DNA of 64,000 nt, from positions 248,001 to 312,000 of the forward strand of contig NW_027271468.1 in NCBI RefSeq assembly GCF_040938485.1. Reading direction: 5' to 3'. Positions 13,346 to 52,356 of this stretch are shown here, piece after piece. Position 1 is the stretch's first letter. Each line of letters starts with the position of its first letter. The notes beneath the pieces were generated by a model. The model did not search any database. It saw only the letters and a list, made by a program, of their open reading frames with translations, and was not told the origin of the DNA. Position numbers and translations under genes: made by a program. The stretch comes from Diadema antillarum. Taxonomy: Eukaryota.

Positions 13346-16300
13346 GTCAGGAAATCTCACTCCACGTTCAAGTTCACCTTACAGAACTACTCCAGACAAG
13401 TTTTAAGTTTTCTGGGTAAAAGAAGAAGAGGAAGAAGAATAAATTTCACAAACATAGGATTGAAAGCTAAACAAAAATGGATAAAAATTAGAGCAGAATG
13501 TATTAGATTGTGAAATTTTCTAATACTTTAACTAAACAATTCTTCAGCAGTCAAAATGAATATAAAATAATAATAATGATAACAACAGTAACAATAATAA
13601 TAATAGTAATGGTGGTAGTAGTAGCAGTAGTAGTATTAATAATAATAATAATAATAATTTAATAACAGCGACGATAATAATGTTAATGCTGGTAGTAGTA
13701 GAAGTAGCAGTAGTTTTAATAATAATAATAACGATATAATAATAATAATAGAGGTATTGGTCATGCCATTTATCAGTCAGTCTGAGTGCTCAAAGGGCAT
13801 GAAAAAATTTCTTTCTTTCACAGCATTAAAGGGGATGGCTAGTAACTGATCAGTGGGAATCATTGGGAATGCTGGGGGTGATTGTTCCAATCCTTGTACA
13901 TTCATTTAAGAGTACAGAGCACTCCCGTTACAACGAACACGGTTATATGAAATTTCGTTATAAGGAAGTAAAACTTCTGGTCCCAAAATTATCGCCATTA
14001 AAGTCTATGGTACAAAATTCGCTTATAACGAACACGGTCATAGCGAAATTTTCGTTATAACGAAGTCTTTTCCGAGCGCAACTGACAAAGAAAAACAAAA
14101 GAAATGTGCTCCGTTATAACGAGCTGAGGATCGCTTTCGAAAATACGTAGCGGAACAAGCATTTATAGCGTCTCTGCATGGGCGACCGCGTCACATCACT
14201 GTGTGTTCGCTTGGTGTGTCACGCAGTTTCCGAGGGGAACTTGCGTTATTGTAATACAATAATCTGAAATTGAATAACTATTTGTTTTATTGTTCACATA
14301 GATTTCCAGTGTATGACGAGTATTCAACAAACAGAATATGATATATGCGTGGCTTCCTTGTTTTCGTTATATATTGTATTTGTTCGGTTATAACGAAATT
14401 TCGTTATAACGAAAGAAAATTGCCGGTCTCGAGCATTTCGTTATAACGGGAGTGCACTGATATCTATTGTTGTGTGAAAGTCATTTGCTTCAGAATGGTC
14501 TCATATTCAAGTAATGTGCAGTTTAATGTTTCCAGGTTAGCATGCCTGTACAGTGACGGGGCGATCGTTAACGGGCCGTTAGAGAGAAAGAAATAGAGGA
14601 AATAATTCGAATGAATTCGAGATTAAGAATTTTAATGACACCCTTCACATCAAAACGTGCGAGTATAGGAAACTATATAACCATACGGCAATGCTGACCT
14701 TGTATGTCATGGAAGAGGGGTTAGTGCTCATTATTGACCTACAGAATAATTTTTATGCTATTTTTTCTTTTATGTAAAGAACGATGGGAGAGATTGTGCG
14801 ATGCTGACGTCGTGCGTGAGACACTTCTAGTATGCATTGTGATTTTGACTTATATAGGCGCGGTCAGACTGGCAAAAAATCGAATGGTTTAAGATCGCAA
14901 AGTCTTCGCGATCTTTTGTCGTCCAGTCACATTGGCAAAAGATCGAGAATTTTGGTGGGGGTGGCATAGGGGGAAATAACCCTATAGTTGCAGTGGGAAG
15001 TTTCGCGAGAAGTTTCGCGGAAGTTTTGCGGGAAGTTTGCTTCGAGAACTTTTAAAGGTGCGGTCAGACTGGCAAAAGATCGAGAAGTTTAAGATCGCGA
15101 TCTTTAAGATCTCGAAGTTTTGCCAGAGTGACCGCAAACTTCCCGCGAAACTTCTCGATCTGTTTGCGGGCGGTGTCTCCGAAGCGCGAGGCCATTGTCA
15201 TGTACAGATGTGCATTGTTACGTCACAATCACTAGCCATCGGACGGCGCACTCTTTCTTGCGCGCGTACCAATGGCCCAAACTTCGGAATCTTAAACTTC
15301 TCCATCTTTTGCCAGTCTCGTATGCATATCAAATTCTAATTATTAAAGAGTCGTTCTGTTTGTTTAGATTCAACTTCAATATAGAATGGGGGAATCCCTT
15401 GGAATCCATCAGTAATTTTGTAGATTCCAGAGTGGTTTCTATGCGTTTGGTTTCGTTTCATTCCGTTTTCAAAGTTATTCGTATTAATCATCATGCACCC
15501 GACTACTAGCATACTGTCGATTAATGGTAACATTTTTAGAGACGTGATGAATTCTAATGTACCCTTCCGTGAGATTGGTAACTTACTCTACCTTACAATG
15601 GAAAAGGTCTGGATTTGGCTTTTCACTCAATGTGCCACAGAACTTGTGTATGATTCATCCTCCCGTGATATAAATATGTCAAGGTTGGAAATTCAAATAT
15701 TTATATCTAGGGAGGAGTATGTAAGTATTAAGATAACGATGAATATCATTAATGTTGGCAATTATCATTATCACATGGTATTGATTTTATCTTTGGAATT
15801 CATAAGCATTGTCATGGTTGCCATTTTTTATCATGTTAAAGGGATGATACAGGCTCGGTTGAAATGGTGCTTCAAGATTCCAACGTTTGTTTGTTTGTTT
15901 GTTTGTTTTTTGACGATGATTTTTGAGAAAATGAAACTCTTTTAAGAAATATGAAAGAGCATATAATTCTAAATGGAATTCAAAGTATATTTGATGAAAA
16001 TTGGTTTTGAAATGGCTGAGATATCCAGAATAAAGAGATGCTAATAAAAGGTGCGACCAGACCTTTTATTCATATTTGATTGCTTTGTTGTACGGTACTT
16101 TATTATTTTTTATTATATCTCAGCCATTTCAAGAAAGATTTTTATCAACTAAATTTTGAGTTCCTGTGAGAATTGTGTGCACTTCGAATTACATAGATTG
16201 GTTTCTAAGTATTTTACAAAAAGTTAAAAACTGAATCCTCATTCACCTTGAGCAACCAATAAAACATCCCTTTAACGCATTTCTTTTGTCTGTTTTTTTT

Positions 16301-19300
16301 TTCGTACTCTATCCGTTTAATTACTCGGAAAAAAGAAAATATTGCAAGCCTGATTATAGTTGGCTTTTCTAACTGATTAATTCATAAATGACATGGTATG
16401 TAATATAGAATTTAAAAGGGGATAATTATGAGCAGGGGTGCAACTGTACTGTTTGTCGACTTTTTCTTTTCTTTTAAACTGATATCAGGTGTAATCCAAA
16501 GAGGAGTGAGGTGTGTTGGCTGTGACGCTTCAGACATAGCTGGTAGCTACTGGATATGCACAATGTGCCCGAGGTGCAAACTATGCACAGACTGCTACAT
16601 GCAAGATACACATGCAGCCACTCACGAGTTCTGCAGGAAGGACGAGCCGTATGATACTGGGTAAGAAACTGGTTTCAGAGAAGTACAGTGATGATGATAA
16701 TGATAATAATAATAGCAATAATGATAATGATGATCATAATAATGATAGTAATGATATCAATAGTAATGAAAATAGTGCTACACAATGAAATTATGAAAAT
16801 CTGATATCAAATGCAATAAGCATTTCGATGACGATACGATGTAAAAGTAAAAGAATGAATCTAAGGTGTTTGATATTGATAATAACCGTGACGTTAATGA
16901 TGATAATGCTTTGATAGCAAGTGATGCGAGAAATGTCCAAATAGTCATACACATACACTTGTAAGATACGCAAATTAGTTTAAAACATATTAATGTGCGA
17001 CAGTGATCAATCTTGTCAGTTTCATCTTGCAACTCGTGTATCACAGGGTGCTTGTTGGCACGAGAGAAGACACAAGGACAGTGAAAGCTCGTGGTTTACT
17101 TCCTGGGGCAAAGGTCAAGAGGGGGTCAGACTGGAACTACGAAGACGAGGATGGTAAGTTACATAAAGTTCGAAGTGTTTGCGTCACGTACAAATATGAT
17201 TCATACTTGAAATGTGTGTATAGATAAAACAATATCCTGACCGAAGAGCCTGCGCACACTATTGTCTTTAGGGATATGATAATTATTCCCCCTTCGCTAG
17301 CGCACACGTGTTTGTGAGTTGATTCAGTGTGCACTTTGTGTGTGCGTGTGTGAATGTGTATGTGTGTGTGTGTGTGTGTGTGTGTTTATTTTCTCTTTTT
17401 TTTTCTGTTTCCGACTCATGTCTCATGTACTATGGTATCAAGATTATTATGTAAATGAGGTATCGGGGGCCTGACAAAAACTCTGAGATAAACAGAGGTT
17501 GATTCGTGCTTCTTCATTCAAGGCGGAAAGAAACAATGGGGAAACGTGAAGGACGTCTGCGATTGGTCGGATTCATCGCGCGCGAGCGGTGTCATCGTCC
17601 AATGGAGCAACGGCCTGACTAAGAAATACCGTGCGGGGCACGATGGGAAGGTAGACGTCAAGGCGATGGGAAGGTAGACGTCAAGGCAACGGAAGGAGCT
17701 GATGGTGAATGTTTCTACATACATCACCTCGCGAGTGTCGGTGAGTACTCAACCCTCCCTTCGTTTAAGTTTTGCCTGGTATTTGAAATTCGTGTTTGTT
17801 ATCACTACTTATATCGATTGTAAATAAAAAAGAGAAGACAATGGACACATTCCACAAGTGCACAATGATTTGTGAAAATAATAACCTTGCATTTCTTGAA
17901 GGAGAATAAATCTCTTCAACTTAAAGGTCACAAGAAAAAGCCAGTTGTAGTCTAAACTGATGATTCGTTGGCTTTCAACACGTTATTAAAGTGAGTCATT
18001 TCCCTTTCTTCTGTTTTGAAAGTAATGAATTTCTGTGACGCTTTAATATTGTAGTGTGTGTTAGTGTGTGATGTGTGGCTATGTGTGTGTGATTTCATGC
18101 ATAATTATTATCATCAATCGGGATTTTTTTTTGTCTGTATTTATCGTATATACTATCCATGTTATATTTGTCGTTCATTACTCTCTTGCTTAATCTCTCT
18201 GTTTGCTTCAGAATGGTTGCCTTTTGGCAAAAGATTTTATGAAAAGAAACTGAATGAAAAATAACTTGAAACCAGTAAAGTTCTTACTGACCTCTTTGAA
18301 ATTGATTTTAAATGGGTAAAATACCATATCTAAAATTGTTCGTTTACAGGCGGGCGAAAATTTATCTTCTCTTGTATGTGGAGTTCGAGTTCATTTTTTT
18401 ATTCTCTCTCTCCAGGCGAGCGAAATTCACCTATCATAGGAGACAAGTTAATGATTGTCATGGATATGGAAAGTTTGAACTTTTATCAAAAATGTCTGGG
18501 ACAAAATTACCCCGACGGCCTATCAGAGGTAAGTGCATTTTCATTCTTTGTTTTTCGCTTCCGCTAAGTACATTTACTCTCTAGAACTTTAGAATTAAAA
18601 ATATATATATATAAAAGATATACCAAGTAGCTCATTCCGAGCAATACAGCACACACATACAAGCTTAACAATAAGTACACACCTGCGCGTATAATCTTTG
18701 GACACATTTTTTTTTTTTTTCACGAATACAATCAAACCACGTCATTACCGGTGTACTGTAATGGTATACGCTTTCTCACCATATCACTAGTTTTGTTATT
18801 TCCCACTCTTTTTTTTAAATACATGTACCAATAGGGAAGTTTTAATTGCATTTTGATTTTAGGCACTTTGCAGTCAAAATCACAGATGTTTGTCTTCCCT
18901 TGGAATTGCAATTTATTATGTTTATGTACTGTACCATGCTAAATGCAGACGCACTCAATCATTCATAACTTCTTCTTTTTTTTTTGACAAACGCAAACTG
19001 CGTGTAAAAAGTCTCTCTCTTACTTTTTCACACACCTTGGCTCGTAAGAGAAACGAGAAATGAAGAGACAAAATGTTAAAAACACAATTATGTATTATCA
19101 TGCATATATAAAGTCAAGGCAGATATCTTAAGTTTCATATGTATCATGTAATATATAAACATTTTATTGTTATCGTGCTTGTTATGTCAACTAGGCCTTA
19201 TTTTTATAATATAAGCTACATAATTATGTAAAGTCAAGGCAAATCTTAAAGTTTTGTATATGTATAGTACATTATACACCGTCATAGAATCCCAATATCA

Positions 19301-22300
19301 TTCGCCAGTTTTATTTAGAATGGAGAAGGGTTTTAAAGGATGCTGTTTTTGTTTCCTCTTCTCAATGCTAAGAAACTTGGAGTTGCGGGGTTTATGGCAA
19401 ACTGGAATGACCGAGGTTGGATCGGGCTGCGCTACGACGACGGAGTCACGCTGGAGGTTCCCTCCTTCCTCCTGAAGAAAGTACGACCCTGCTTGGGTCG
19501 GGGGCAATTACCCCCTGGGAAATTACCACAGACCCATCCCTTGACCGTAACCCTAATTCTTATCCTGAACCTGATCATACACCTAGCCCAAACTCTATAC
19601 CTAACTCTAACCCTAATCTTTACTAAAACCTTATCACTTATAATAGTAACCAAGATTAGCCGGGGGGGGGGGGGGGGGGAGCGTTGTGGACATGTGGTGG
19701 AAATCCGCCTGGTATTGCTCCTCTCTCACTGCTCATCATATACTTATAATCTTTAACTGGAAGTGGGGGATAGTTACAGTCTCCTGTCACTGTGTTAAAA
19801 GAGAGCGAGTGTGTTAGCGCTGTGATTGCCACATTCATGACATTGGGGAACAAAGAAATATTATAATGTATAAACGCATTCTTTGAAATGTCATGAATAT
19901 TGCAGTGGTGTAAGATCTTAAACCTTCGTAGAGCACGATGTGACTCCGTTTTCAAAATATGTGATTGTTGTTTCATTCCGTCGTCAGTAGCGAATTGTAT
20001 CAAAACAAGAGCATGAACGACTGGAAATCAGTATTTTTGCAATCGTAGTCAGGATTGCCGAGAGCAACTGTAGAACAAACCTTTATACCTGGGAGACATA
20101 TTCGTGAGACAGCAGATGTTAGTATGGTGCTTGGAAATATAACTTGTTTCAAAGATAGTGATGAAAAATCGCACTATACATCTCCATGAAGAGACGCTTA
20201 TTACATGGCAGAATGTGACTTTCCTCTTGCAGTGCGTCGAATTTCATACCGGCGACCGGGTAAGAATCAGCAGCAACATCGACTTAATAAAGAGGCTACA
20301 AGTTGGCCATGGCGACTGGACAGACACAATGAAGTTGGTGAGACAAATATTTTTTTTTTCAATTAAAATCATATAAGAATAAATACTAGAACAGCGAAAA
20401 TGGCAACACACAATGTGCTTCCATTCAAAAAGAAAGAAAGGGAAAAAAATTCTTGGCGCGCATTGTCTGCAGTCCAACATTTTCAAAGACGGGCAAATCC
20501 CCGCAGAAATCCCCGGATGTCCGTCTTGCCATATATTGATGCAATGTTGCGCCTCAATATTCTGTCGGGTTGATGTTTGCGGCTTTCCTTTAGGAAAGCA
20601 TTACGTTCATAGCTCAACAAACGTTTCTCTCTTTACTTTCTTCCCATGAACCGAAAAAGTCATTCTCGCTTAGCATTCGTTTTCGATAAGGTGGTTCAGT
20701 TGTTGGCTTCAGTTGATCTTAGTAATGGCGACTCCGATATTCCAAGGCGTCGCATTGATTTTGGTGAAGTCCACTTTCATGAGTAATCATCTATCAATAT
20801 TACTATCATGTTTTATAACCGATTAATTGTGTTTGAGACTCCAATCTAAATTTCTTTTTTCGTCTTTCTCTCTGTTCTTCCAAAGACCGTCGGACAGTGT
20901 GGCACGGTGGTGAAGGTATTTGACGATAGTGACCTAATAGTCGAGGTCAAAGGTGTTGAACTGATCTATCACCCCGCGTTGATCACCATCATGGAAGACG
21001 GAGAGGTTGATGACGCTGATGATGAGGACTATGATGACATCGGCGTGACGGCCGCGGCAATCGACAAATCTATAATCAACAAGGGCGAGACAAAGGGTTG
21101 GTAAAGTACTTCTTGATTATATGGCAGTGCTTTTTTTTTTTTGGGGGGGGGGGGGGTTGGAATCAAGTCATATTTAAGAGAGACAACATCCTTGAGAAGA
21201 CACAAAATCATCATCCTATATGTGTGCAACGATAGCATTGCCACAAATCACGTTCTCATCCAAAATGCCTCTTTATTAAAGTAATCAATTAGTCAGAGCT
21301 CACGGATCGTTTTCCCTATACGGATCTTGTGAAGAACGGTAGAATTTAATTGTTTGTTTCTGACACCAAACAGCATCTCAGTGATCATGATTTATAGCTT
21401 ACTGGCACCAGTCGTTGTTATGCTCGACAATTCTCAGTCAAGAGTCCTGGTTGTCAGCATGACATTTCTTAAATATCCGTGAATAAAGTGGTCTATGCAA
21501 CTGGATAATACCACTGATGACAGGGAGAAATGATACAAACTTAAACGGTGCAAACATAACTATGAAAGTCATTAAGCTGCATTTCATTTGTTTTTTTTAC
21601 TCCTCTGATCGGTATAGATTGTACGTTATAATACTTTACCTTTTAAGCCGTTTGTAAAGCCAATAGCGGTTTATTGACATTCTCGTTGGCTCCGGTTCTT
21701 AAACCTTCTGTGCTTATGAGTCTAATGCGCCCAAATTTCACACACAAGCACAAAAGAAGTCGTATAAGGGAAATGATAATTGGCCTGAAATACTTTATAA
21801 CAAGTTCTCGGACTTAGTAAATGGATAAAATATGATAAATGATAAGCTTTACAAACTGCTTAAAGGGTAAAGTATTATAACGTACAATCTATACCGATCA
21901 GAAGAGTAAAAAAACAACAACAAACAAATGAAATGCAGCTTAATGACTTTCATCGTTATGTTTGCACCATTTAGGTTTGTATCATTTCTCCCTGTCATCA
22001 GTGGTATTATCCTGTTGCATAGACCACTTTATTCACGGATATTTTAAGAAATGTGATGCTGACTTCACTGAGGACAACCACTAATGCGAGTAAACTATAG
22101 ATAGATACATTATTGAGACGCATGGTGTCCGAAATAAACAAATAAATTAAACCATTCTTCACAAGATCCGTTCACGAAAACGATCCATGAGCTCTGACTA
22201 ATTCGTTAATTAAGGATGCATTTTCGATGAGAACGTGACTTGTGGCAATGCTATCGTTAACCCGATCATCTGTGGCGTTCTTCCAAAGGTTCATTTTTTT

Positions 22301-23671
22301 TCGAAGGTTCGTAATTCCGAGAAAGAAGTAAGTTTCGTCATTCCGAAGGTTCGTTAATCCGAAAAATTTTAGTTCGCTAATCCGAAGATGTGAAAACGGT
22401 GCGTACAAACGAACCTTCATATTATGAACCTTTTTTGTTTTTGGATTGACGAACATTCTGCACACTATAACGACCCTTATTTCATTTCGGATTAAAGAAT
22501 CTTCGGAATAACGAACTGAAATGGCAACACACAGAGACATGAACAACACTGATGCAGTTGGTAGGAGCAGCGGTCTACAATCTGGTAGTCTCGGGTTCGA
22601 ATTCCGATGGAGTCCCATTTTCTTTTCCTTACTGTACAATATAGATTATATTTCTGGTCAGTTTTCATTGCTTGCATTTATTTCATTAAATAGTCAAAAA
22701 GCTACATAGCTTCCATGATCCCTCGCGTTTATCCCCCAAAATGATTTCAATCCCTCTGGTTTATGTCGAGTTTATGTATAAAGCATCTGACCGCACGATC
22801 GTTCGGAAATAAGGTGTCTCTGAATAGGACGAATACTATACTTGGGTTTCCCATAGCTCCGTCGGTAAAACTCCGGTCAAGCAATTTGGTGAACTCGGGT
22901 TGGAATCATGATGGTATCCCATTTTCTTTGCTCATTTTTCATTAACAAAATAATGTTTTCAGATAATTCATTTTTTTTTTTTTTTTTGCAGACACTGACG
23001 AGGACGAGCAAATGCTTCGAAACATCCTCGTCGACAGGTTTGTTTGTTTGTTTGTTTGTTTTATTTTGTTTAATCACGGGATAAAATGCCCTCGATCAGC
23101 CAGAAAAGTTTTTTGTTTTTTGTTTTTTGTTGTTGTGTTTTTTAGAGGCCGTGAATACAGTGTTACAACAACAACAAAAAACAGCACACACTTAACAAAT
23201 CAATCAAAGCAAATTAATAACAAAAACAAGCATAACATAATAAAATACATTACAACATGAATAGCAGAAACTATATATCAAGAAAAAACAAAACAGAAAA
23301 GGAATATAGACATAACCACCAAACACAAACGCTACAAAAGAGGGTGACACAAACAGGTTCACGGAAATTCAGACAAATTAGCTCAAGCATAATTATGAAA
23401 TCCACCTAACACTCATACTCTAATATTCTTTCAAAATCTGTCAAATTACTTATTATTCTTACATTTTCGGGGAGTTTATTGCATATCTTAACACTGGAAT
23501 AAATATAATACATCAAAATTTCAGGTAAGTGCTCACAAATTGCTATACGGAGTGATTACCTGCAGTTTTCTTTCATTATATCGAAATGTATTCATAGTTG
23601 TATAGATGGCAATTTTGGGACGAAATTACGATAATATGTATAATTATGTTATATAAATATATGTATATATG

Positions 23672-23710
<39 letters not shown>

Positions 23711-24692
23711 AGTTAATCATAGAGTTTCCATGGGCAAGTTAAAGCAAAATCATCTATGTACGCTTTTAATCTTTATTGTCCGTCTGTAAAATCATTTTTG
23801 TTTCAGTTTCTATGCACATATAAACGCATAAAGCATTAAGCAAAATTCAATCACAAGAGGGTTGATCTAACTCCCGCCACCGTATTTCGCTCCTGTCCGC
23901 CAGTGAATTTTTAAACACAAGCCAAAACGAAGTTGCAGAAAACACACATAGTTGTCTAGTTTTGATTACAGTACCAGTCAGTATCGCTGAATACATCTTC
24001 TTATGAATCCTTTTGAAAGAAAATATATCAATAATCAAACCGTGACATCTCCACCAAACACATTTTTCAGAAAAAACTCGTATTGAAACAGACAAATATA
24101 GCTTCGATTTTCAAACATCGAACTAAAAACAGAACCAATGACAGTACAATGGCATAATAGTTTTTCGTCTCGAAACCATAACACAGTGTCATATAGACTT
24201 GATCTCAGAACAAAACAAAACAAAAAACAACAACAACTAAGTAACATATACCTTCTCGATCTTAGTGACATCTCTGTTCACGTAATTTGATAAAGGAATA
24301 TTTTGTTTTTGCTTTGTCATGTTTGTAGCTTTAGAGCTTTTGGAAGGATATTATGTGATGTCACATAACGATATGAGGAAAATAACTGAAAATGCCAAGA
24401 AACTTTTTTTTTTAAAGTTAAGAGCATACTCCCTTTACTTTTTACGTACATAATATTGCAGGTAATATGACTGAAAATACATGGCATAATCTTAATTCTT
24501 TCTTTATATAATTTCACTGCTGTGACAACTTTATTTTCTGTAGTTTTCTCATTCAGGATTGACAGCTGCTGTACTCGACAAAACTCCCAAAACCTTTGAA
24601 CGGACTGTCCGATTTTTCGCAAGCTTTACACTGATGTGTCCTATACCACTATACTGAATCCATCCAACATATCTAGGGCAAATTTTGCTATG

Positions 24693-24745
<53 letters not shown>

Positions 24746-27231
24746 CATACATCGCGGTTTGTAGCAGGTTGGTGGACAAGATGAAGCAAGTGGGACTAAA
24801 GGACGGATCGAAGGCGGAGGGCAAAGCATTCGTCCGGAGCGCTGCTGAAGGCAAGGTAGACAAGGTCAGAGAGCTGCTACGCCAGCGCCCAGAGCTCGTA
24901 AGTCGGAGTTCCTTCCAGTACAGTTGCTAATTCTTCTCCAGCAAAGTTGTGATTACTTTGCAGAGAACATTCTTAAAAATCTTACTTGCCAATATAATAC
25001 CAGCAATCGCAATGTTATTACCACAAAACGTTCCACTAAATGTTGCCCTTTAACGTATCGCCTTTGCAATGTGTTCTCGAGCCGAATGCCTGGCGGCTGG
25101 TAAACAATTGCGAATACGAGTACGAATGAAATGTCACACAGTAATTATAACCTCCTTATGTCAGATTAACAAGATAACAAGTAGCCGAGACGTAGAGTGA
25201 CAGGCATGACAGGCATTTTCAAGTTCTCGTGTATAGAAGGTGAATACTCATATTTCTGGGAGTAGATTGTTTATCCAACGTATAGCTGTGACATTATTTC
25301 ACAAATAGTGTATACTACATTGTATTTGTGAAATGTCTTCACAAAAAAGGACGTTATTTTCAGTGTGATGTACCATGAAGTGTCATACGTGCCAACATTC
25401 TGAAATGGTCGAAAATATATGGGTGCACGTCACGAGACCGACACCCACGAGTCATACAGCCCACAAGTCATACAGCTCACGAGTCATACAGCCCATGAGT
25501 TATGCAGCTCACGAGTCATACAACCCATGAGTTATACAGTTCACGAGTCATACAACTCATGAGTTCGACACTGAGCTAACGAGGCCCTAGAGACCGACAC
25601 ATTAACCCCCGTGTTGTATTTGTCGAACTCGTGGGCTGTTTTCACCTAGTGTCAAACTCACGGGCTTTATTTGCCTGGTGTCGAACTCGTGGGCCGTATG
25701 ACTCGTGGGTGTCGGTCTTGTGGGATGATCTCGAAAATACACATCACATGAAGGTCGTTCAGGCAATCGCTTATAAAGGATTATTTTACTTAAATCCCAA
25801 TATGATATTACTCATAAAGGTGAAGGCCAAGCATAGCAGTCGGACGGCGCTGCATGTGGCAAGCCATGAGGGTTACCTACCGGTGGTGCAGCTCCTAGTC
25901 GAAGCGAACGCACCCCTTGAGGAAAAGGACGACGATGGCGACACAGCCCTAGCATACGCCGTCATTGGGTGAGTCAACGTCCCCTTCGTTGCCGAAGCAC
26001 CTCGATGCGTGTTTGCAATATCCTCTCACGTCCCCATTTAATAATTTTTAGCTAAAACAGTCAGGGAGTGAACATCTGAGATATTTGAACGACTTTGTTT
26101 TGGTGGATTGATAGGCCAGTGAACACTTAACCATTTCTGTGCCGGGGCCTTGGGACGGTGTACATGTACACAATGTCATGGGGTTTTCTATGTCAATCAG
26201 CATTCAACGCACACAACGGGATGGACGGGAAATCCTTGGTTTAATCATGCCCTGAACTGTCTTGGACACGATATTATATTATTCCGTTTGTTTTTAATTG
26301 TCTCTCTTGGCATAGCTAGGGGTATGAGTTGGTGTTTGGGTGTGCTAGGGTTATTAAAAATGTCAGGAACTTATATGAGAGCAATGTTGACACTTCAGAG
26401 GCTGCTGTGGGTTACAGCAATATGATTGTGATTGTGTTGTGATTGTACTTGTGATTGTGATTATGATTGTGATTGTTATTGTGATTATGATTGTTATTGT
26501 GATTGTGGTTGTGATAATGATTATGATTATGATTATGATTATTAGAACTTTTACTCTTGACATGCAGCTTACAGATGCTGCAAAGCGATGAACAGAGGTG
26601 AATTCATTTTGAATACTTTCCAATCACCTTCATGATATGAATACGTTCATTTTCTCTCATCAATATGACATGTCTGCGAGGGAATGAGAAATATTAGGTT
26701 AATTTTATCAGGAGTTATTACAATGAAACTAATTAGTGTAACATTCTCTTCAGCAACAACCCGTCCATCGTGGAATATCTTATCAAGAGAGGCGCCTACG
26801 CTAATGCGACCAACAAACACAGGCTGACTCCCCTTCACCTCAGTGCAGCCAAAGGTCACCAAGCATGCGCAATGAAGCTCCTGCGCCGAGGCGGAAGTGT
26901 GAATGTGCAGGTCAGGGATAATTTGTGTTAAGCAATTTGTAAAATCTTTGAAAACTCTTTTGTGACATTGTCTGATGCGAAGACGGAAGTTATGTAAAGC
27001 ACACAGAGATTCCTTTTGCACTATATAGGGTGCCTAAAGGCAGGCAAATCATTATTATTATTATCAAGAGCTCTTTATATAAAGCTTCAAAAGGCCCAAA
27101 AGCATCATTCTCGAGTGTTCTGTTCTGTTCTGATGTTGTGGTATAAGGACACTTTATGACATCTTTATAATCCGCACATCTCAAAGTTTAATGTGGCTCT
27201 TTGAGAAAACACATTTATGAGAAATATGTTC

Positions 27232-27285
<54 letters not shown>

Positions 27286-28291
27286 TATTATATTCAAATA
27301 TATTATCTCTGTGTGTATATTCAATTTCCCCACTCTTCCCACAGCTGGAGAGTTAAGACAGCAGACGACACTTGTAAATAGCAGTTACTTTTGTTGTGTC
27401 TATAAGTTTAAGACAAGAGAATAATTAGCACTTTGATATAACCATCCAAAGAAACAAACAAACAAACAAACAAACAAACAAACGAACCAGAGCTAAACAC
27501 TCTTGGGCTTTCCACTGTACGTTTACAAATTGTTAACTCGCTACAATGTCAATTTATTTTCTTATGTTTTGAAAATATTTCTTATTCATGTTCCGAATTA
27601 ATATGTTCAATACTTTGTATTTTGTATATGATTTTGCTGTTTTAAAAATAAAGTCAATCAAACAAACAAACAAACAAACAAACAAGTATGTTATTTGTCA
27701 TGCTCACAGGATAATGTTCGTAATTTACCGGTCCACCTTGCCATCAAGCGTAACTCGGATTCCCTCCTCGAACCGCTCATCAACAACCCACAGGCCGACT
27801 TGCGTCTACGGAACGCCAAAGGTTTCACGCCACTCCACTACGCAGTGCGCAATAAACTTCCAGAGTCAGTGCGCCTTCCGTCATTACTTCAGTCACTGTT
27901 ATACCGTCCTATTATTTTCTGCTTGTTCTTTTCTTTCCTTACTTTACTTTCTCTAAGTTCACCTAATCCTCTGCTTTGCCTTATCTTTCTTCTCCTCTTT
28001 TTCCTACTCTTTAATCTTCTTTAATCGTCTCTGTCATGTTAATTTTGACAATCTTGTACTCTTCTTGTCTTGATCGGTAATTTTGCCATTGTATGTCTCA
28101 TAAATTTCAGAAGGCGTTGGGCTACGATTCCCTTTACCATGAATTATTCTATGATTTATGATTTTCCTACTGTTAAATTACGCTCGTTCGTGGACGATTA
28201 TCCATTCAACACTCAGCGCAGTTGTCATAACTAAGTAATGTAACACAATCACATATCATGTATTCAATCAAGTATTTCAAGGATTGTAATG

Positions 28292-28326
<35 letters not shown>

Positions 28327-52112: not shown

Positions 52113-52356
52113 ATGGCGACGCTGCAAATAGGTCAGCGGGTCGTGCGCAGTGACATGTGGACCTGGCCGGACCAAGATGGTGGAAGTGGTCACGTGGGTA
52201 CCGTAGTGTCACTTCCAGGACGTTCCATCCTTGAGGTGCTAGGGTCCGTTCCCCATGGATGGGTCAGAGTTCGATGGGACGTAGGTAACGGCAACAACTA
52301 TCGCGCTGGCGGTTCCGAGAAATATGATCTGCTCCTTCTCGACAATGCTCCAGCTG
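52113..52356 (+). CDS. Gene 2 exon 1: MIB/HERC2 domain
   Basis: IGQRVVRSDMWTWPDQDGGSGHVGTV..VRWDVGNGNNYRAG..YDLLLLDNAPAG; G|gtgagt donor. Confidence 0.93.

What the first reader, a model, noticed from the sequence alone, without database searches (positions are those of the whole stretch)
17641..17687. 23-bp exonic tandem duplication that breaks the frame yet forms a perfect GT..AG unit
Seen: CGATGGGAAGGTAGACGTCAAGG occurs twice (17641-17663 and 17664-17686), giving TAG at 17675-17677 after 226 codons. Because the unit contains AAG|GTA, bases 17651-17673 read GTAGAC...GGGAAG, and excising them restores the consensus MIB/HERC2 frame exactly. Known: duplication of an AG|GT proto-splice site is a proposed intron-gain mechanism, but 23 nt is below the usual metazoan minimum intron size. 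Inference: a nascent micro-intron, a null allele, or an assembly artefact.
Basis: partly seen in the sequence, partly recalled or inferred. Interest (0 to 1): 0.72.

Follow-up and report, generated by a model that had tools for sequence, protein, structure and literature searches.

The report
Frameshifting 23-bp duplication on one haplotype
One of the two retained parental copies of a sea-urchin mind-bomb-like kinase gene carries an exact 23-base tandem duplication that breaks its reading frame; it is most likely an ordinary heterozygous null allele (less likely an assembly error), and nothing supports a new tiny intron.

Summary
CGATGGGAAGGTAGACGTCAAGG occurs twice, exactly and head to tail, at 17641-17686. 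It lies in an RNA-confirmed exon (17523-17740) that encodes the end of the second MIB/HERC2 domain, and it gives TAG at 17675-17677 after 226 codons.

The window belongs to the 1.75-Gb Diadema antillarum assembly, whose authors say it retains both parental haplotypes. The window's contig C580 (437 kb) runs parallel, at all four places sampled from its first base to 406 kb, to part of contig C316. C316 has the same exon with one copy of the 23-mer. About 1020 other codons are open in both copies (dN/dS 0.21), so the duplication is a young, single lesion.

In all three public runs that cover the site (two DNA, one spliced RNA from another animal), every contig has one copy. None shows the duplication. 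These are collapsed contigs, so they cannot prove it absent.

GT..AG follows automatically from a duplicated unit that contains AGGT. The 23-nt unit is far below the working intron length of ordinary animals, has a weak donor and has no pyrimidine tract.

Verdict: a heterozygous frameshift allele on an unpurged haplotig (about 0.7), or an assembly artefact (about 0.2). A micro-intron is very unlikely. Low interest.

The parts
17641..17663 (+). First copy of the 23-bp unit CGATGGGAAGGTAGACGTCAAGG
   Evidence: It is an exact copy. The allelic contig C316 has only one unit here.
17664..17686 (+). Second copy of the 23-bp unit. The base after it (C, 17687) repeats the first base of the unit, which is 1 nt of junction microhomology.
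   Evidence: (TRF array 17641-17687).
17675..17677 (+). Premature TAG stop created by the frameshift. It is codon 227 and lies 63 nt upstream of the exon 4 donor.
17651..17673 (+). There is no evidence that it is spliced.
17523..17740 (+). Exon 4 (218 nt with the duplication, 195 nt without; phase 1 at both ends). It encodes the C-terminal two thirds of the second MIB/HERC2 domain.
   Evidence: Spliced contigs of run X3 give the joints 17153|17523 and 17740|18416. Pfam PF06701 matches at E 4.8e-12.
17047..17153 (+). Exon 3, the start of the second MIB/HERC2 domain.
   Evidence: Spliced contig joints. Pfam match.
16489..16660 (+). Exon 2, the ZZ zinc finger.
13099..13345 (+). Exon 1, with the start codon and the first MIB/HERC2 domain.
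   Evidence: Pfam E 3.5e-22. Sequence. The loose end of the X3 contig matches the end of this exon.
18416..18528 (+). Exon 5. Both allelic forms are seen as spliced RNA contigs in run X3.
   Evidence: records 19 and 20.
13099..38765 (+). The whole gene: MIB/HERC2, ZZ, MIB/HERC2, mind-bomb SH3 repeats, ankyrin repeats, protein kinase. Apart from the duplication, all examined exons are open.

Best explanation
The duplication is a real, young, heterozygous 23-bp tandem duplication, of the kind replication slippage produces. It sits in exon 4 of one parental copy of a mind-bomb-like ankyrin-kinase gene in the sequenced Diadema antillarum male. The assembly kept both parental haplotypes as separate contigs. 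The window's contig C580 carries the duplicated allele, and contig C316 carries the intact allele. The extra 23 nt shift the frame and give a TAG after 226 codons. The predicted product keeps the first MIB/HERC2 domain, the ZZ finger and a second MIB/HERC2 domain with an altered end, and it lacks the SH3 repeats, ankyrin repeats and kinase. The stop lies 63 nt before the exon 4 junction and many junctions follow, so the mRNA is a likely target of nonsense-mediated decay. In short, this is a loss-of-function allele of one member of a tandemly duplicated, highly polymorphic family. Shown here: the duplication in the assembly, the frame and stop, the allelic single-copy contig, the exon structure, and the integrity of the other exons. 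Inferred: that the duplication exists in the animal's DNA, that it arose by slippage, and that the mRNA is degraded.
For: The repeat is exact and the stop follows it. The base count of G000, 1,754,659,819, equals that printed for GCA_040938485.1 in PMC13511894. That paper concludes the assembly retains both haplotypes (BUSCO 84.4% duplicated; haploid size about 0.7-0.9 Gb). C580 (436,658 bp) matches C316 in the same order and orientation at four sampled places, from its first base to 406 kb. The same exon on C316 has one unit and an open frame. Nineteen exon segments (about 1020 codons) have no stop or indel in either copy, with dS 0.087 and dN/dS 0.21, so the lesion is single and recent. A comparable exact 22-bp two-copy duplication sits in intron 1 of C316 and is absent from the window, so such duplications occur on both haplotypes. 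It is the only long, complex, exact tandem duplication among 85 indels of 8 bp or more between the two contigs, so there is no sign of a systematic artefact. Homologues read through this point with one copy of the motif.
Against: No public contig shows the duplication. At 17641, every contig laid from runs X1, X2 and X3 lacks the 23 nt and carries the C316-type neighbouring SNPs. These are Logan contigs. X1 holds 850 Mb against a 1.75-Gb two-haplotype assembly, so roughly half of haplotype-specific sequence is dropped. The window-type haplotype is missing from X1 across the whole of 16948-17820, not only at the repeat. The test is therefore inconclusive rather than negative. The assembly was built at only about 11x HiFi per haplotype and was polished with Racon using low-coverage short reads, which leaves some room for error.
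Confidence: 0.7

Rival explanations
1. The duplication is an assembly or polishing artefact. The animal's second haplotype has one copy of the 23-mer, and the extra copy was introduced during hifiasm consensus building, cross-individual RagTag patching, or Racon polishing with low-coverage short reads.
For: No contig from any of the four runs laid shows the duplication. The assembly pipeline used about 11x HiFi per haplotype, ONT patches from other animals and Racon short-read polishing. Both copies are identical, as a fresh artefact would be.
Against: HiFi and hifiasm errors are typically homopolymer or low-complexity indels, not exact 23-bp duplications in complex sequence (my own knowledge). 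It is the only such case among 85 larger indels in 64 kb, and the window shows no periodic pattern of such duplications. The authors state that patching added no scaffold-level sequence. A matching natural-looking 22-bp duplication exists on the other haplotype. The reads test could not see this haplotype at all in 16948-17820, so it does not count against the duplication specifically.
Confidence: 0.2
2. The 23-nt unit is a nascent micro-intron. The GT..AG unit at 17651-17673 is removed by the spliceosome at least in part, so the allele still makes full-length protein. This would be intron gain by tandem duplication of an AGGT site.
For: The unit contains AAG|GTA, so the duplication creates GT..AG, and its removal restores the frame exactly. 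The mechanism has been shown experimentally for longer duplications (PMC3265369).
Against: The length is 23 nt, against about 60 nt given as the minimal functional intron and about 30 bp as the lower limit in animals other than myxobolids and a dicyemid. This gene's real introns are 369-3143 nt. The donor lacks G at +5, and only 5 of the 18 bases before the AG are pyrimidines, against 11-17 of 18. I did not look for a branch-site motif. The spliced RNA contigs come from single-copy alleles, so they say nothing in favour.
Confidence: 0.02
3. C580 and C316 are not alleles but two loci of a recent segmental duplication of at least 437 kb, and the C580 copy is a young pseudogene present in every animal.
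For: Exons 5-8 differ by 8-12% in nucleotides and dS is 0.087, well above the genome-wide heterozygosity of 2.52%. The earlier preprint read the redundancy as past duplication.
Against: C580 matches C316 in the same order wherever it was sampled, from its first base to 406 kb, which is the classic haplotig pattern. The authors' later paper attributes the redundancy to retained alleles. In X1 the two types each have about 8x against 16-25x for shared sequence, matching the published 11x and 23x k-mer peaks. X2 switches from window-type letters (16912-17158) to C316-type letters (from 17158), and in X3 one shared single-copy exon 2-4 contig feeds two forms of exon 5. Both patterns are as expected of recombining alleles.
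Confidence: 0.06

Closest known systems
Heterozygous small tandem-duplication frameshift (loss-of-function) alleles seen between the haplotigs of highly heterozygous marine invertebrates
   Same: It is an exact short tandem duplication with 1 nt of junction microhomology. It is present on one of two retained haplotypes. It creates a premature stop well upstream of the last exon junction. The rest of the gene is intact.
   Different: Raw-read support for the variant could not be obtained here, so its reality in the animal is inferred.
Intron gain by tandem duplication of an AGGT site (Rogers' model; ATP2A1 re-enactment by Hellsten et al. 2011, PMC3265369; potato RdRp case, PMC4974935)
   Same: An exonic tandem duplication whose unit contains AG|GT creates a GT..AG segment, and removing that segment restores the original coding sequence.
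   Different: The separation is 23 nt, against the required minimum of about 60 nt. There is no pyrimidine tract, the donor is weak, and there is no transcript evidence. The defining step, actual splicing, is neither shown nor expected.
Ultra-short spliceosomal introns (myxobolid myxozoans at 22-27 bp median, Dicyema, ciliates; PMC13644364)
   Same: The length class, about 23 nt with GT..AG ends.
   Different: Those lineages have genome-wide intron shortening with reduced splice-site motifs. This sea-urchin gene has ordinary introns of 369-3143 nt with normal signals.
Mind bomb (MIB1/MIB2) N-terminal module
   Same: The order MIB/HERC2, ZZ, MIB/HERC2, then mind-bomb SH3 repeats and ankyrin repeats (Pfam).
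   Different: The C-terminus is a protein kinase domain rather than RING fingers. The same architecture occurs in database proteins P0013 and P0014. This is the host gene, not the finding.

Membership tests
Intron gained by tandem duplication of an AGGT site | An exact or near-exact tandem duplication inside a coding exon whose unit contains AGGT | tested here: met
   The unit is CGATGGGAAG|GTAGACGTCAAGG, present twice.
Intron gained by tandem duplication of an AGGT site | Removal of the GT..AG segment restores the ancestral reading frame | tested here: met
   This is automatic for any such duplication.
Intron gained by tandem duplication of an AGGT site | GT and AG are separated by at least the minimal functional intron length, given as about 60 nt in PMC3265369 and about 30 bp as the lower limit in ordinary animals in PMC13644364 | tested here: not met
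   The separation is 23 nt.
Intron gained by tandem duplication of an AGGT site | Usable splice signals: donor consensus and a pyrimidine tract | tested here: not met
   The donor is AAG|GTAGAC. Only 5 of 18 bases before the AG are pyrimidines, against 11-17 of 18 in four real introns of the gene. The branch site was not examined.
Intron gained by tandem duplication of an AGGT site | Transcripts of the duplication-bearing allele lack the segment | not testable with these tools
   No run held the duplication. The only spliced contigs (X3) come from single-copy alleles of another animal.
Heterozygous loss-of-function allele on a retained haplotig | The contig is an alternative haplotype of another contig of the same assembly | tested here: met
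   Searches show the same order and orientation at four sampled places along C580. PMC13511894 states that this assembly retains both haplotypes.
Heterozygous loss-of-function allele on a retained haplotig | A frameshift with a premature stop on one haplotype and an open frame on the other | tested here: met
Heterozygous loss-of-function allele on a retained haplotig | The variant is present in raw reads of the sequenced animal at about half depth | tested here: inconclusive
   Only collapsed contigs were available. The whole window-type haplotype is missing from X1 between 16948 and 17820.
Assembly artefact | Raw reads of the source animal on this haplotype show one copy | tested here: inconclusive
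   The single-copy contigs all carry the other haplotype's SNPs (17594C, 17632C, 17715T).
MIB/HERC2 domain (PF06701) protein | A match above the Pfam gathering score | tested here: met
   Exon 1 scores 78.5 bits and exon 4 scores 46 bits, against a cut-off of 33.5.

The most novel reading that the evidence does not exclude
The duplication is a real segregating allele, and the sea-urchin spliceosome removes the 23-nt GT..AG unit from a fraction of transcripts. That would be a just-born intron, far below the accepted animal size limit, caught while still polymorphic.
Probability: 0.015. Interest if true: 0.85.

Novelty: already known. Interest (0 to 1): 0.12.

Why it matters
It matters little for biology. 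It is one probable null allele of one member of a tandemly duplicated gene family in one wild sea urchin. Its practical value is as a caution. This reference assembly holds both haplotypes, so allele-specific lesions look like broken genes, and gene counts and pseudogene calls from it need to be checked against the partner contig. The intron-birth idea would matter only if raw reads confirmed the allele and RNA from a carrier showed excision of the 23 nt.

Tried and rejected
The one reads search and the one read-laying run (21, 22) gave only Logan contigs. They show the single-copy form but cannot show that the duplicated form is absent. A look-up of the opposite-strand ORF that spans the duplication found no record. 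Earlier-findings searches near the site and for haplotype words gave nothing.

I considered rescue by the new GT sites paired with the normal acceptor at 18415. Ending exon 4 at 17650 or 17673 leaves the frame broken by my own arithmetic (128 or 151 nt against 195), so I rejected it. I considered Racon window-edge or patch-junction artefacts. The duplication lies inside the haplotype-specific block, with further window-type differences at 17715, 17745 and 17755, and not at its edge. No other such duplications recur in the window. This makes such artefacts less likely but does not exclude them.

I rejected a long-decayed pseudogene because there are no other lesions and dN/dS is 0.21. I did not use the large word-indexed protein search, structure prediction or complex prediction, because the claim does not rest on them. 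Exons were searched and compared one by one by reference. The codon count joined four exons inside a script only. The dN/dS totals were summed exon by exon.

Full report
**Observation.** The 23-mer CGATGGGAAGGTAGACGTCAAGG stands at 17641-17663 and again at 17664-17686 with no mismatch. No dinucleotide shuffle of the window gave two matches, even with three mismatches allowed.

**Gene and frame.** Pfam finds the following along the + strand:
- MIB/HERC2 at 13099-13350.
- A ZZ finger at 16428-16661.
- A second MIB/HERC2 domain, split between 17045-17155 and 17525-17674.
- A mind-bomb SH3 repeat at 20158-20340.
- Ankyrin repeats from 25631.
- A protein kinase at 33674-38762.

Database proteins P0014 and P0013 (about 1090 residues) have the same full architecture. 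They place the exons on both contigs.

Spliced contigs of run X3 confirm three introns, all GT..AG: 16661-17046, 17154-17522 and 17741-18415. Their upstream loose end matches the end of exon 1. Exons 13099-13345, 16489-16660, 17047-17153 and 17523 onward give 226 sense codons and then TAG at 17675-17677. That stop is 63 nt before the exon 4 donor. Exon 4 is 218 nt with the duplication and 195 nt without it.

**Where the window comes from.** The window is C580:248001-312000 of an assembly of 1,754,659,819 bases. PMC13511894 prints exactly that number for Diadema antillarum GCA_040938485.1. According to that paper and its preprint:
- The assembly was made with hifiasm from HiFi reads of the sperm of one male, at about 11x per haplotype.
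- It was patched with ONT assemblies from two other animals.
- It was polished with Racon using MiSeq reads of the same male.
- It is 84.4% BUSCO-duplicated, because both parental haplotypes were retained. The haploid size is about 0.7-0.9 Gb.

**The partner haplotype.** A search of the whole assembly with exon 4 finds two places: the window, and C316:1963489-1963684, which is 23 nt shorter. The alignment shows one copy of the unit on C316, flanked by scattered SNPs and small indels in both exon and intron. The 64-kb window runs parallel to C316:1.947-2.009 Mb at 80-100% identity. Three further 6-kb samples of C580, taken at its first base, at 120 kb and at 400 kb, lie in the same order on C316 at 1.661, 1.829 and 2.166 Mb. 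A 437-kb contig that matches the interior of a 3.5-Mb contig wherever it was sampled, from its first base to 406 kb, is the signature of a haplotig. The two forms are therefore most likely the two alleles of one male.

**State of the rest of the gene.** Nineteen in-frame exon segments, about 1020 codons, align without gaps between the two contigs and hold no stop in either. Summed exon by exon, dS is 0.087 and dN/dS is 0.21. Both lineages have therefore been under purifying selection. The duplication is the only lesion found, and it is either young or not real. Homologues read straight through the site with one copy of the GHDGKVDLK motif, so the single copy is the ancestral state.

**Is this kind of change usual here?** Between the two contigs there are 500 indels, 85 of them 8 bp or longer. 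This is the only long, complex, exact tandem duplication among them. TRF finds a few other exact two-copy repeats. One is a 22-bp unit in intron 1 of C316 (1962324-1962367), where the window has a single diverged copy. Young duplications of about 20 bp therefore occur on both haplotypes, and the window shows no periodic or frequent pattern that would point to a systematic artefact.

**Reads.** All listed runs are kept as Logan contigs. Four were laid on 16300-18700.
- At 17641, every contig that covers the site lacks the 23 nt: X1 at 12.7 of 12.7 depth, X2 at 4.35 of 4.35, and X3 at 21.6 of 21.6.
- These contigs carry the C316-type letters at 17594, 17632 and 17715. They therefore report the other haplotype, not a corrected version of this one.
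- X1 shows both haplotypes in the flanks, at about 8x for the window type and 8-13x for the other. Between 16948 and 17820 it shows only the C316 type.
- X1 holds 850 Mb of contigs against a 1.75-Gb two-haplotype assembly, so about half of haplotype-specific sequence has been collapsed away. By my own estimate, the depths of the retained contigs (12.7-14.9) fit a mixture of haplotype-specific and shared words better than a homozygous stretch.
- The reads test is therefore inconclusive on whether the duplication exists in the animal.

It does show that the single-copy form is present in two DNA samples and, in a third sample, in spliced RNA. X3 is labelled as possibly DNA, but its contigs skip the three introns exactly. 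In X3, one single-copy exon 2-4 contig (depth 21.6) feeds two allelic exon 4-5 contigs. One matches the window exactly (depth 10) and one is C316-type (depth 13.9). So the window-type downstream haplotype exists elsewhere in the population without the duplication. If the duplication is real, it is not fixed on that background.

**The micro-intron idea.** GT..AG is a necessary consequence of duplicating a unit that contains AGGT. The model is known and has been re-enacted experimentally. [quoted passage not shown] A 2026 survey of 51 animal genomes reports introns under 30 bp only in myxobolid myxozoans and a dicyemid, both lineages with genome-wide intron shrinkage and reduced splice motifs (PMC13644364).

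This gene's four checked introns are 369-3143 nt, with donors GTCAGG, GTAAGA, GTAAGT and GTGAGT and 11-17 pyrimidines in the 18 bases before the AG. The candidate has GTAGAC and 5 of 18. Using either new GT with the normal acceptor does not restore the frame. Skipping exon 4 would, because the normal exon is 195 nt with phase 1 at both ends. That is only a possibility, not an observation. No RNA from a carrier exists among the runs found.

**Conclusion.** The duplication is most likely a heterozygous frameshift allele. It predicts a 226-residue truncated product and probably nonsense-mediated decay, and it lies on an unpurged haplotig (about 0.7). An assembly or polishing error remains possible (about 0.2). 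A true paralogous pseudogene (about 0.06) and a spliced micro-intron (about 0.02) are unlikely.

Exons were handled one by one by reference.

Noticed in passing
whole window; C580:1-436658 versus C316:1,661,094 to about 2,172,868: The window's contig matches the interior of a 3.5-Mb contig in the same order at all four places sampled, at 80-100% identity. It is an unpurged haplotig. C316 is about 25% longer over the same span, because of many indels.
   Followed up: yes
L002 / C316:1962324-1962367 (equivalent to window about 16388): There is an exact 22-bp two-copy tandem duplication (TAAATGGCATAATATGTAATAT) in intron 1 of the other haplotype. The window has one diverged copy there.
   Followed up: partly
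window 52119-53471 and beyond; C316:1999920-2022175: A second gene of the same MIB/HERC2-ZZ-ankyrin-kinase family starts about 13 kb downstream, so the locus is a tandem array.
   Followed up: partly
window 18416-21050 (exons 5-8): The two haplotypes differ by 8-12% in nucleotides, with many amino-acid changes, in the exons for the SH3-repeat region. Exon 1 and one kinase exon are identical. This is a very uneven pattern of allelic divergence.
   Followed up: partly
run X3 laid on window 16486-18528: This run is recorded as possibly DNA, but its contigs skip three introns exactly at GT..AG. It is RNA and shows that the gene is expressed in another animal.
   Followed up: yes
window 17523-17740: The normal exon 4 is 195 nt with phase 1 at both ends, so skipping it would keep the frame while removing most of the second MIB/HERC2 domain.
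   Followed up: no
window 12431-13027 (- strand): A 198-residue ORF directly upstream of exon 1 looks to me like the tail of a retrotransposon reverse-transcriptase ORF. I ran no family search on it. Low-complexity runs flank it.
   Followed up: no
window 19583-19616: There is a short telomere-like CTAACC repeat inside an intron, next to an 18-base G run at 19662-19679.
   Followed up: no
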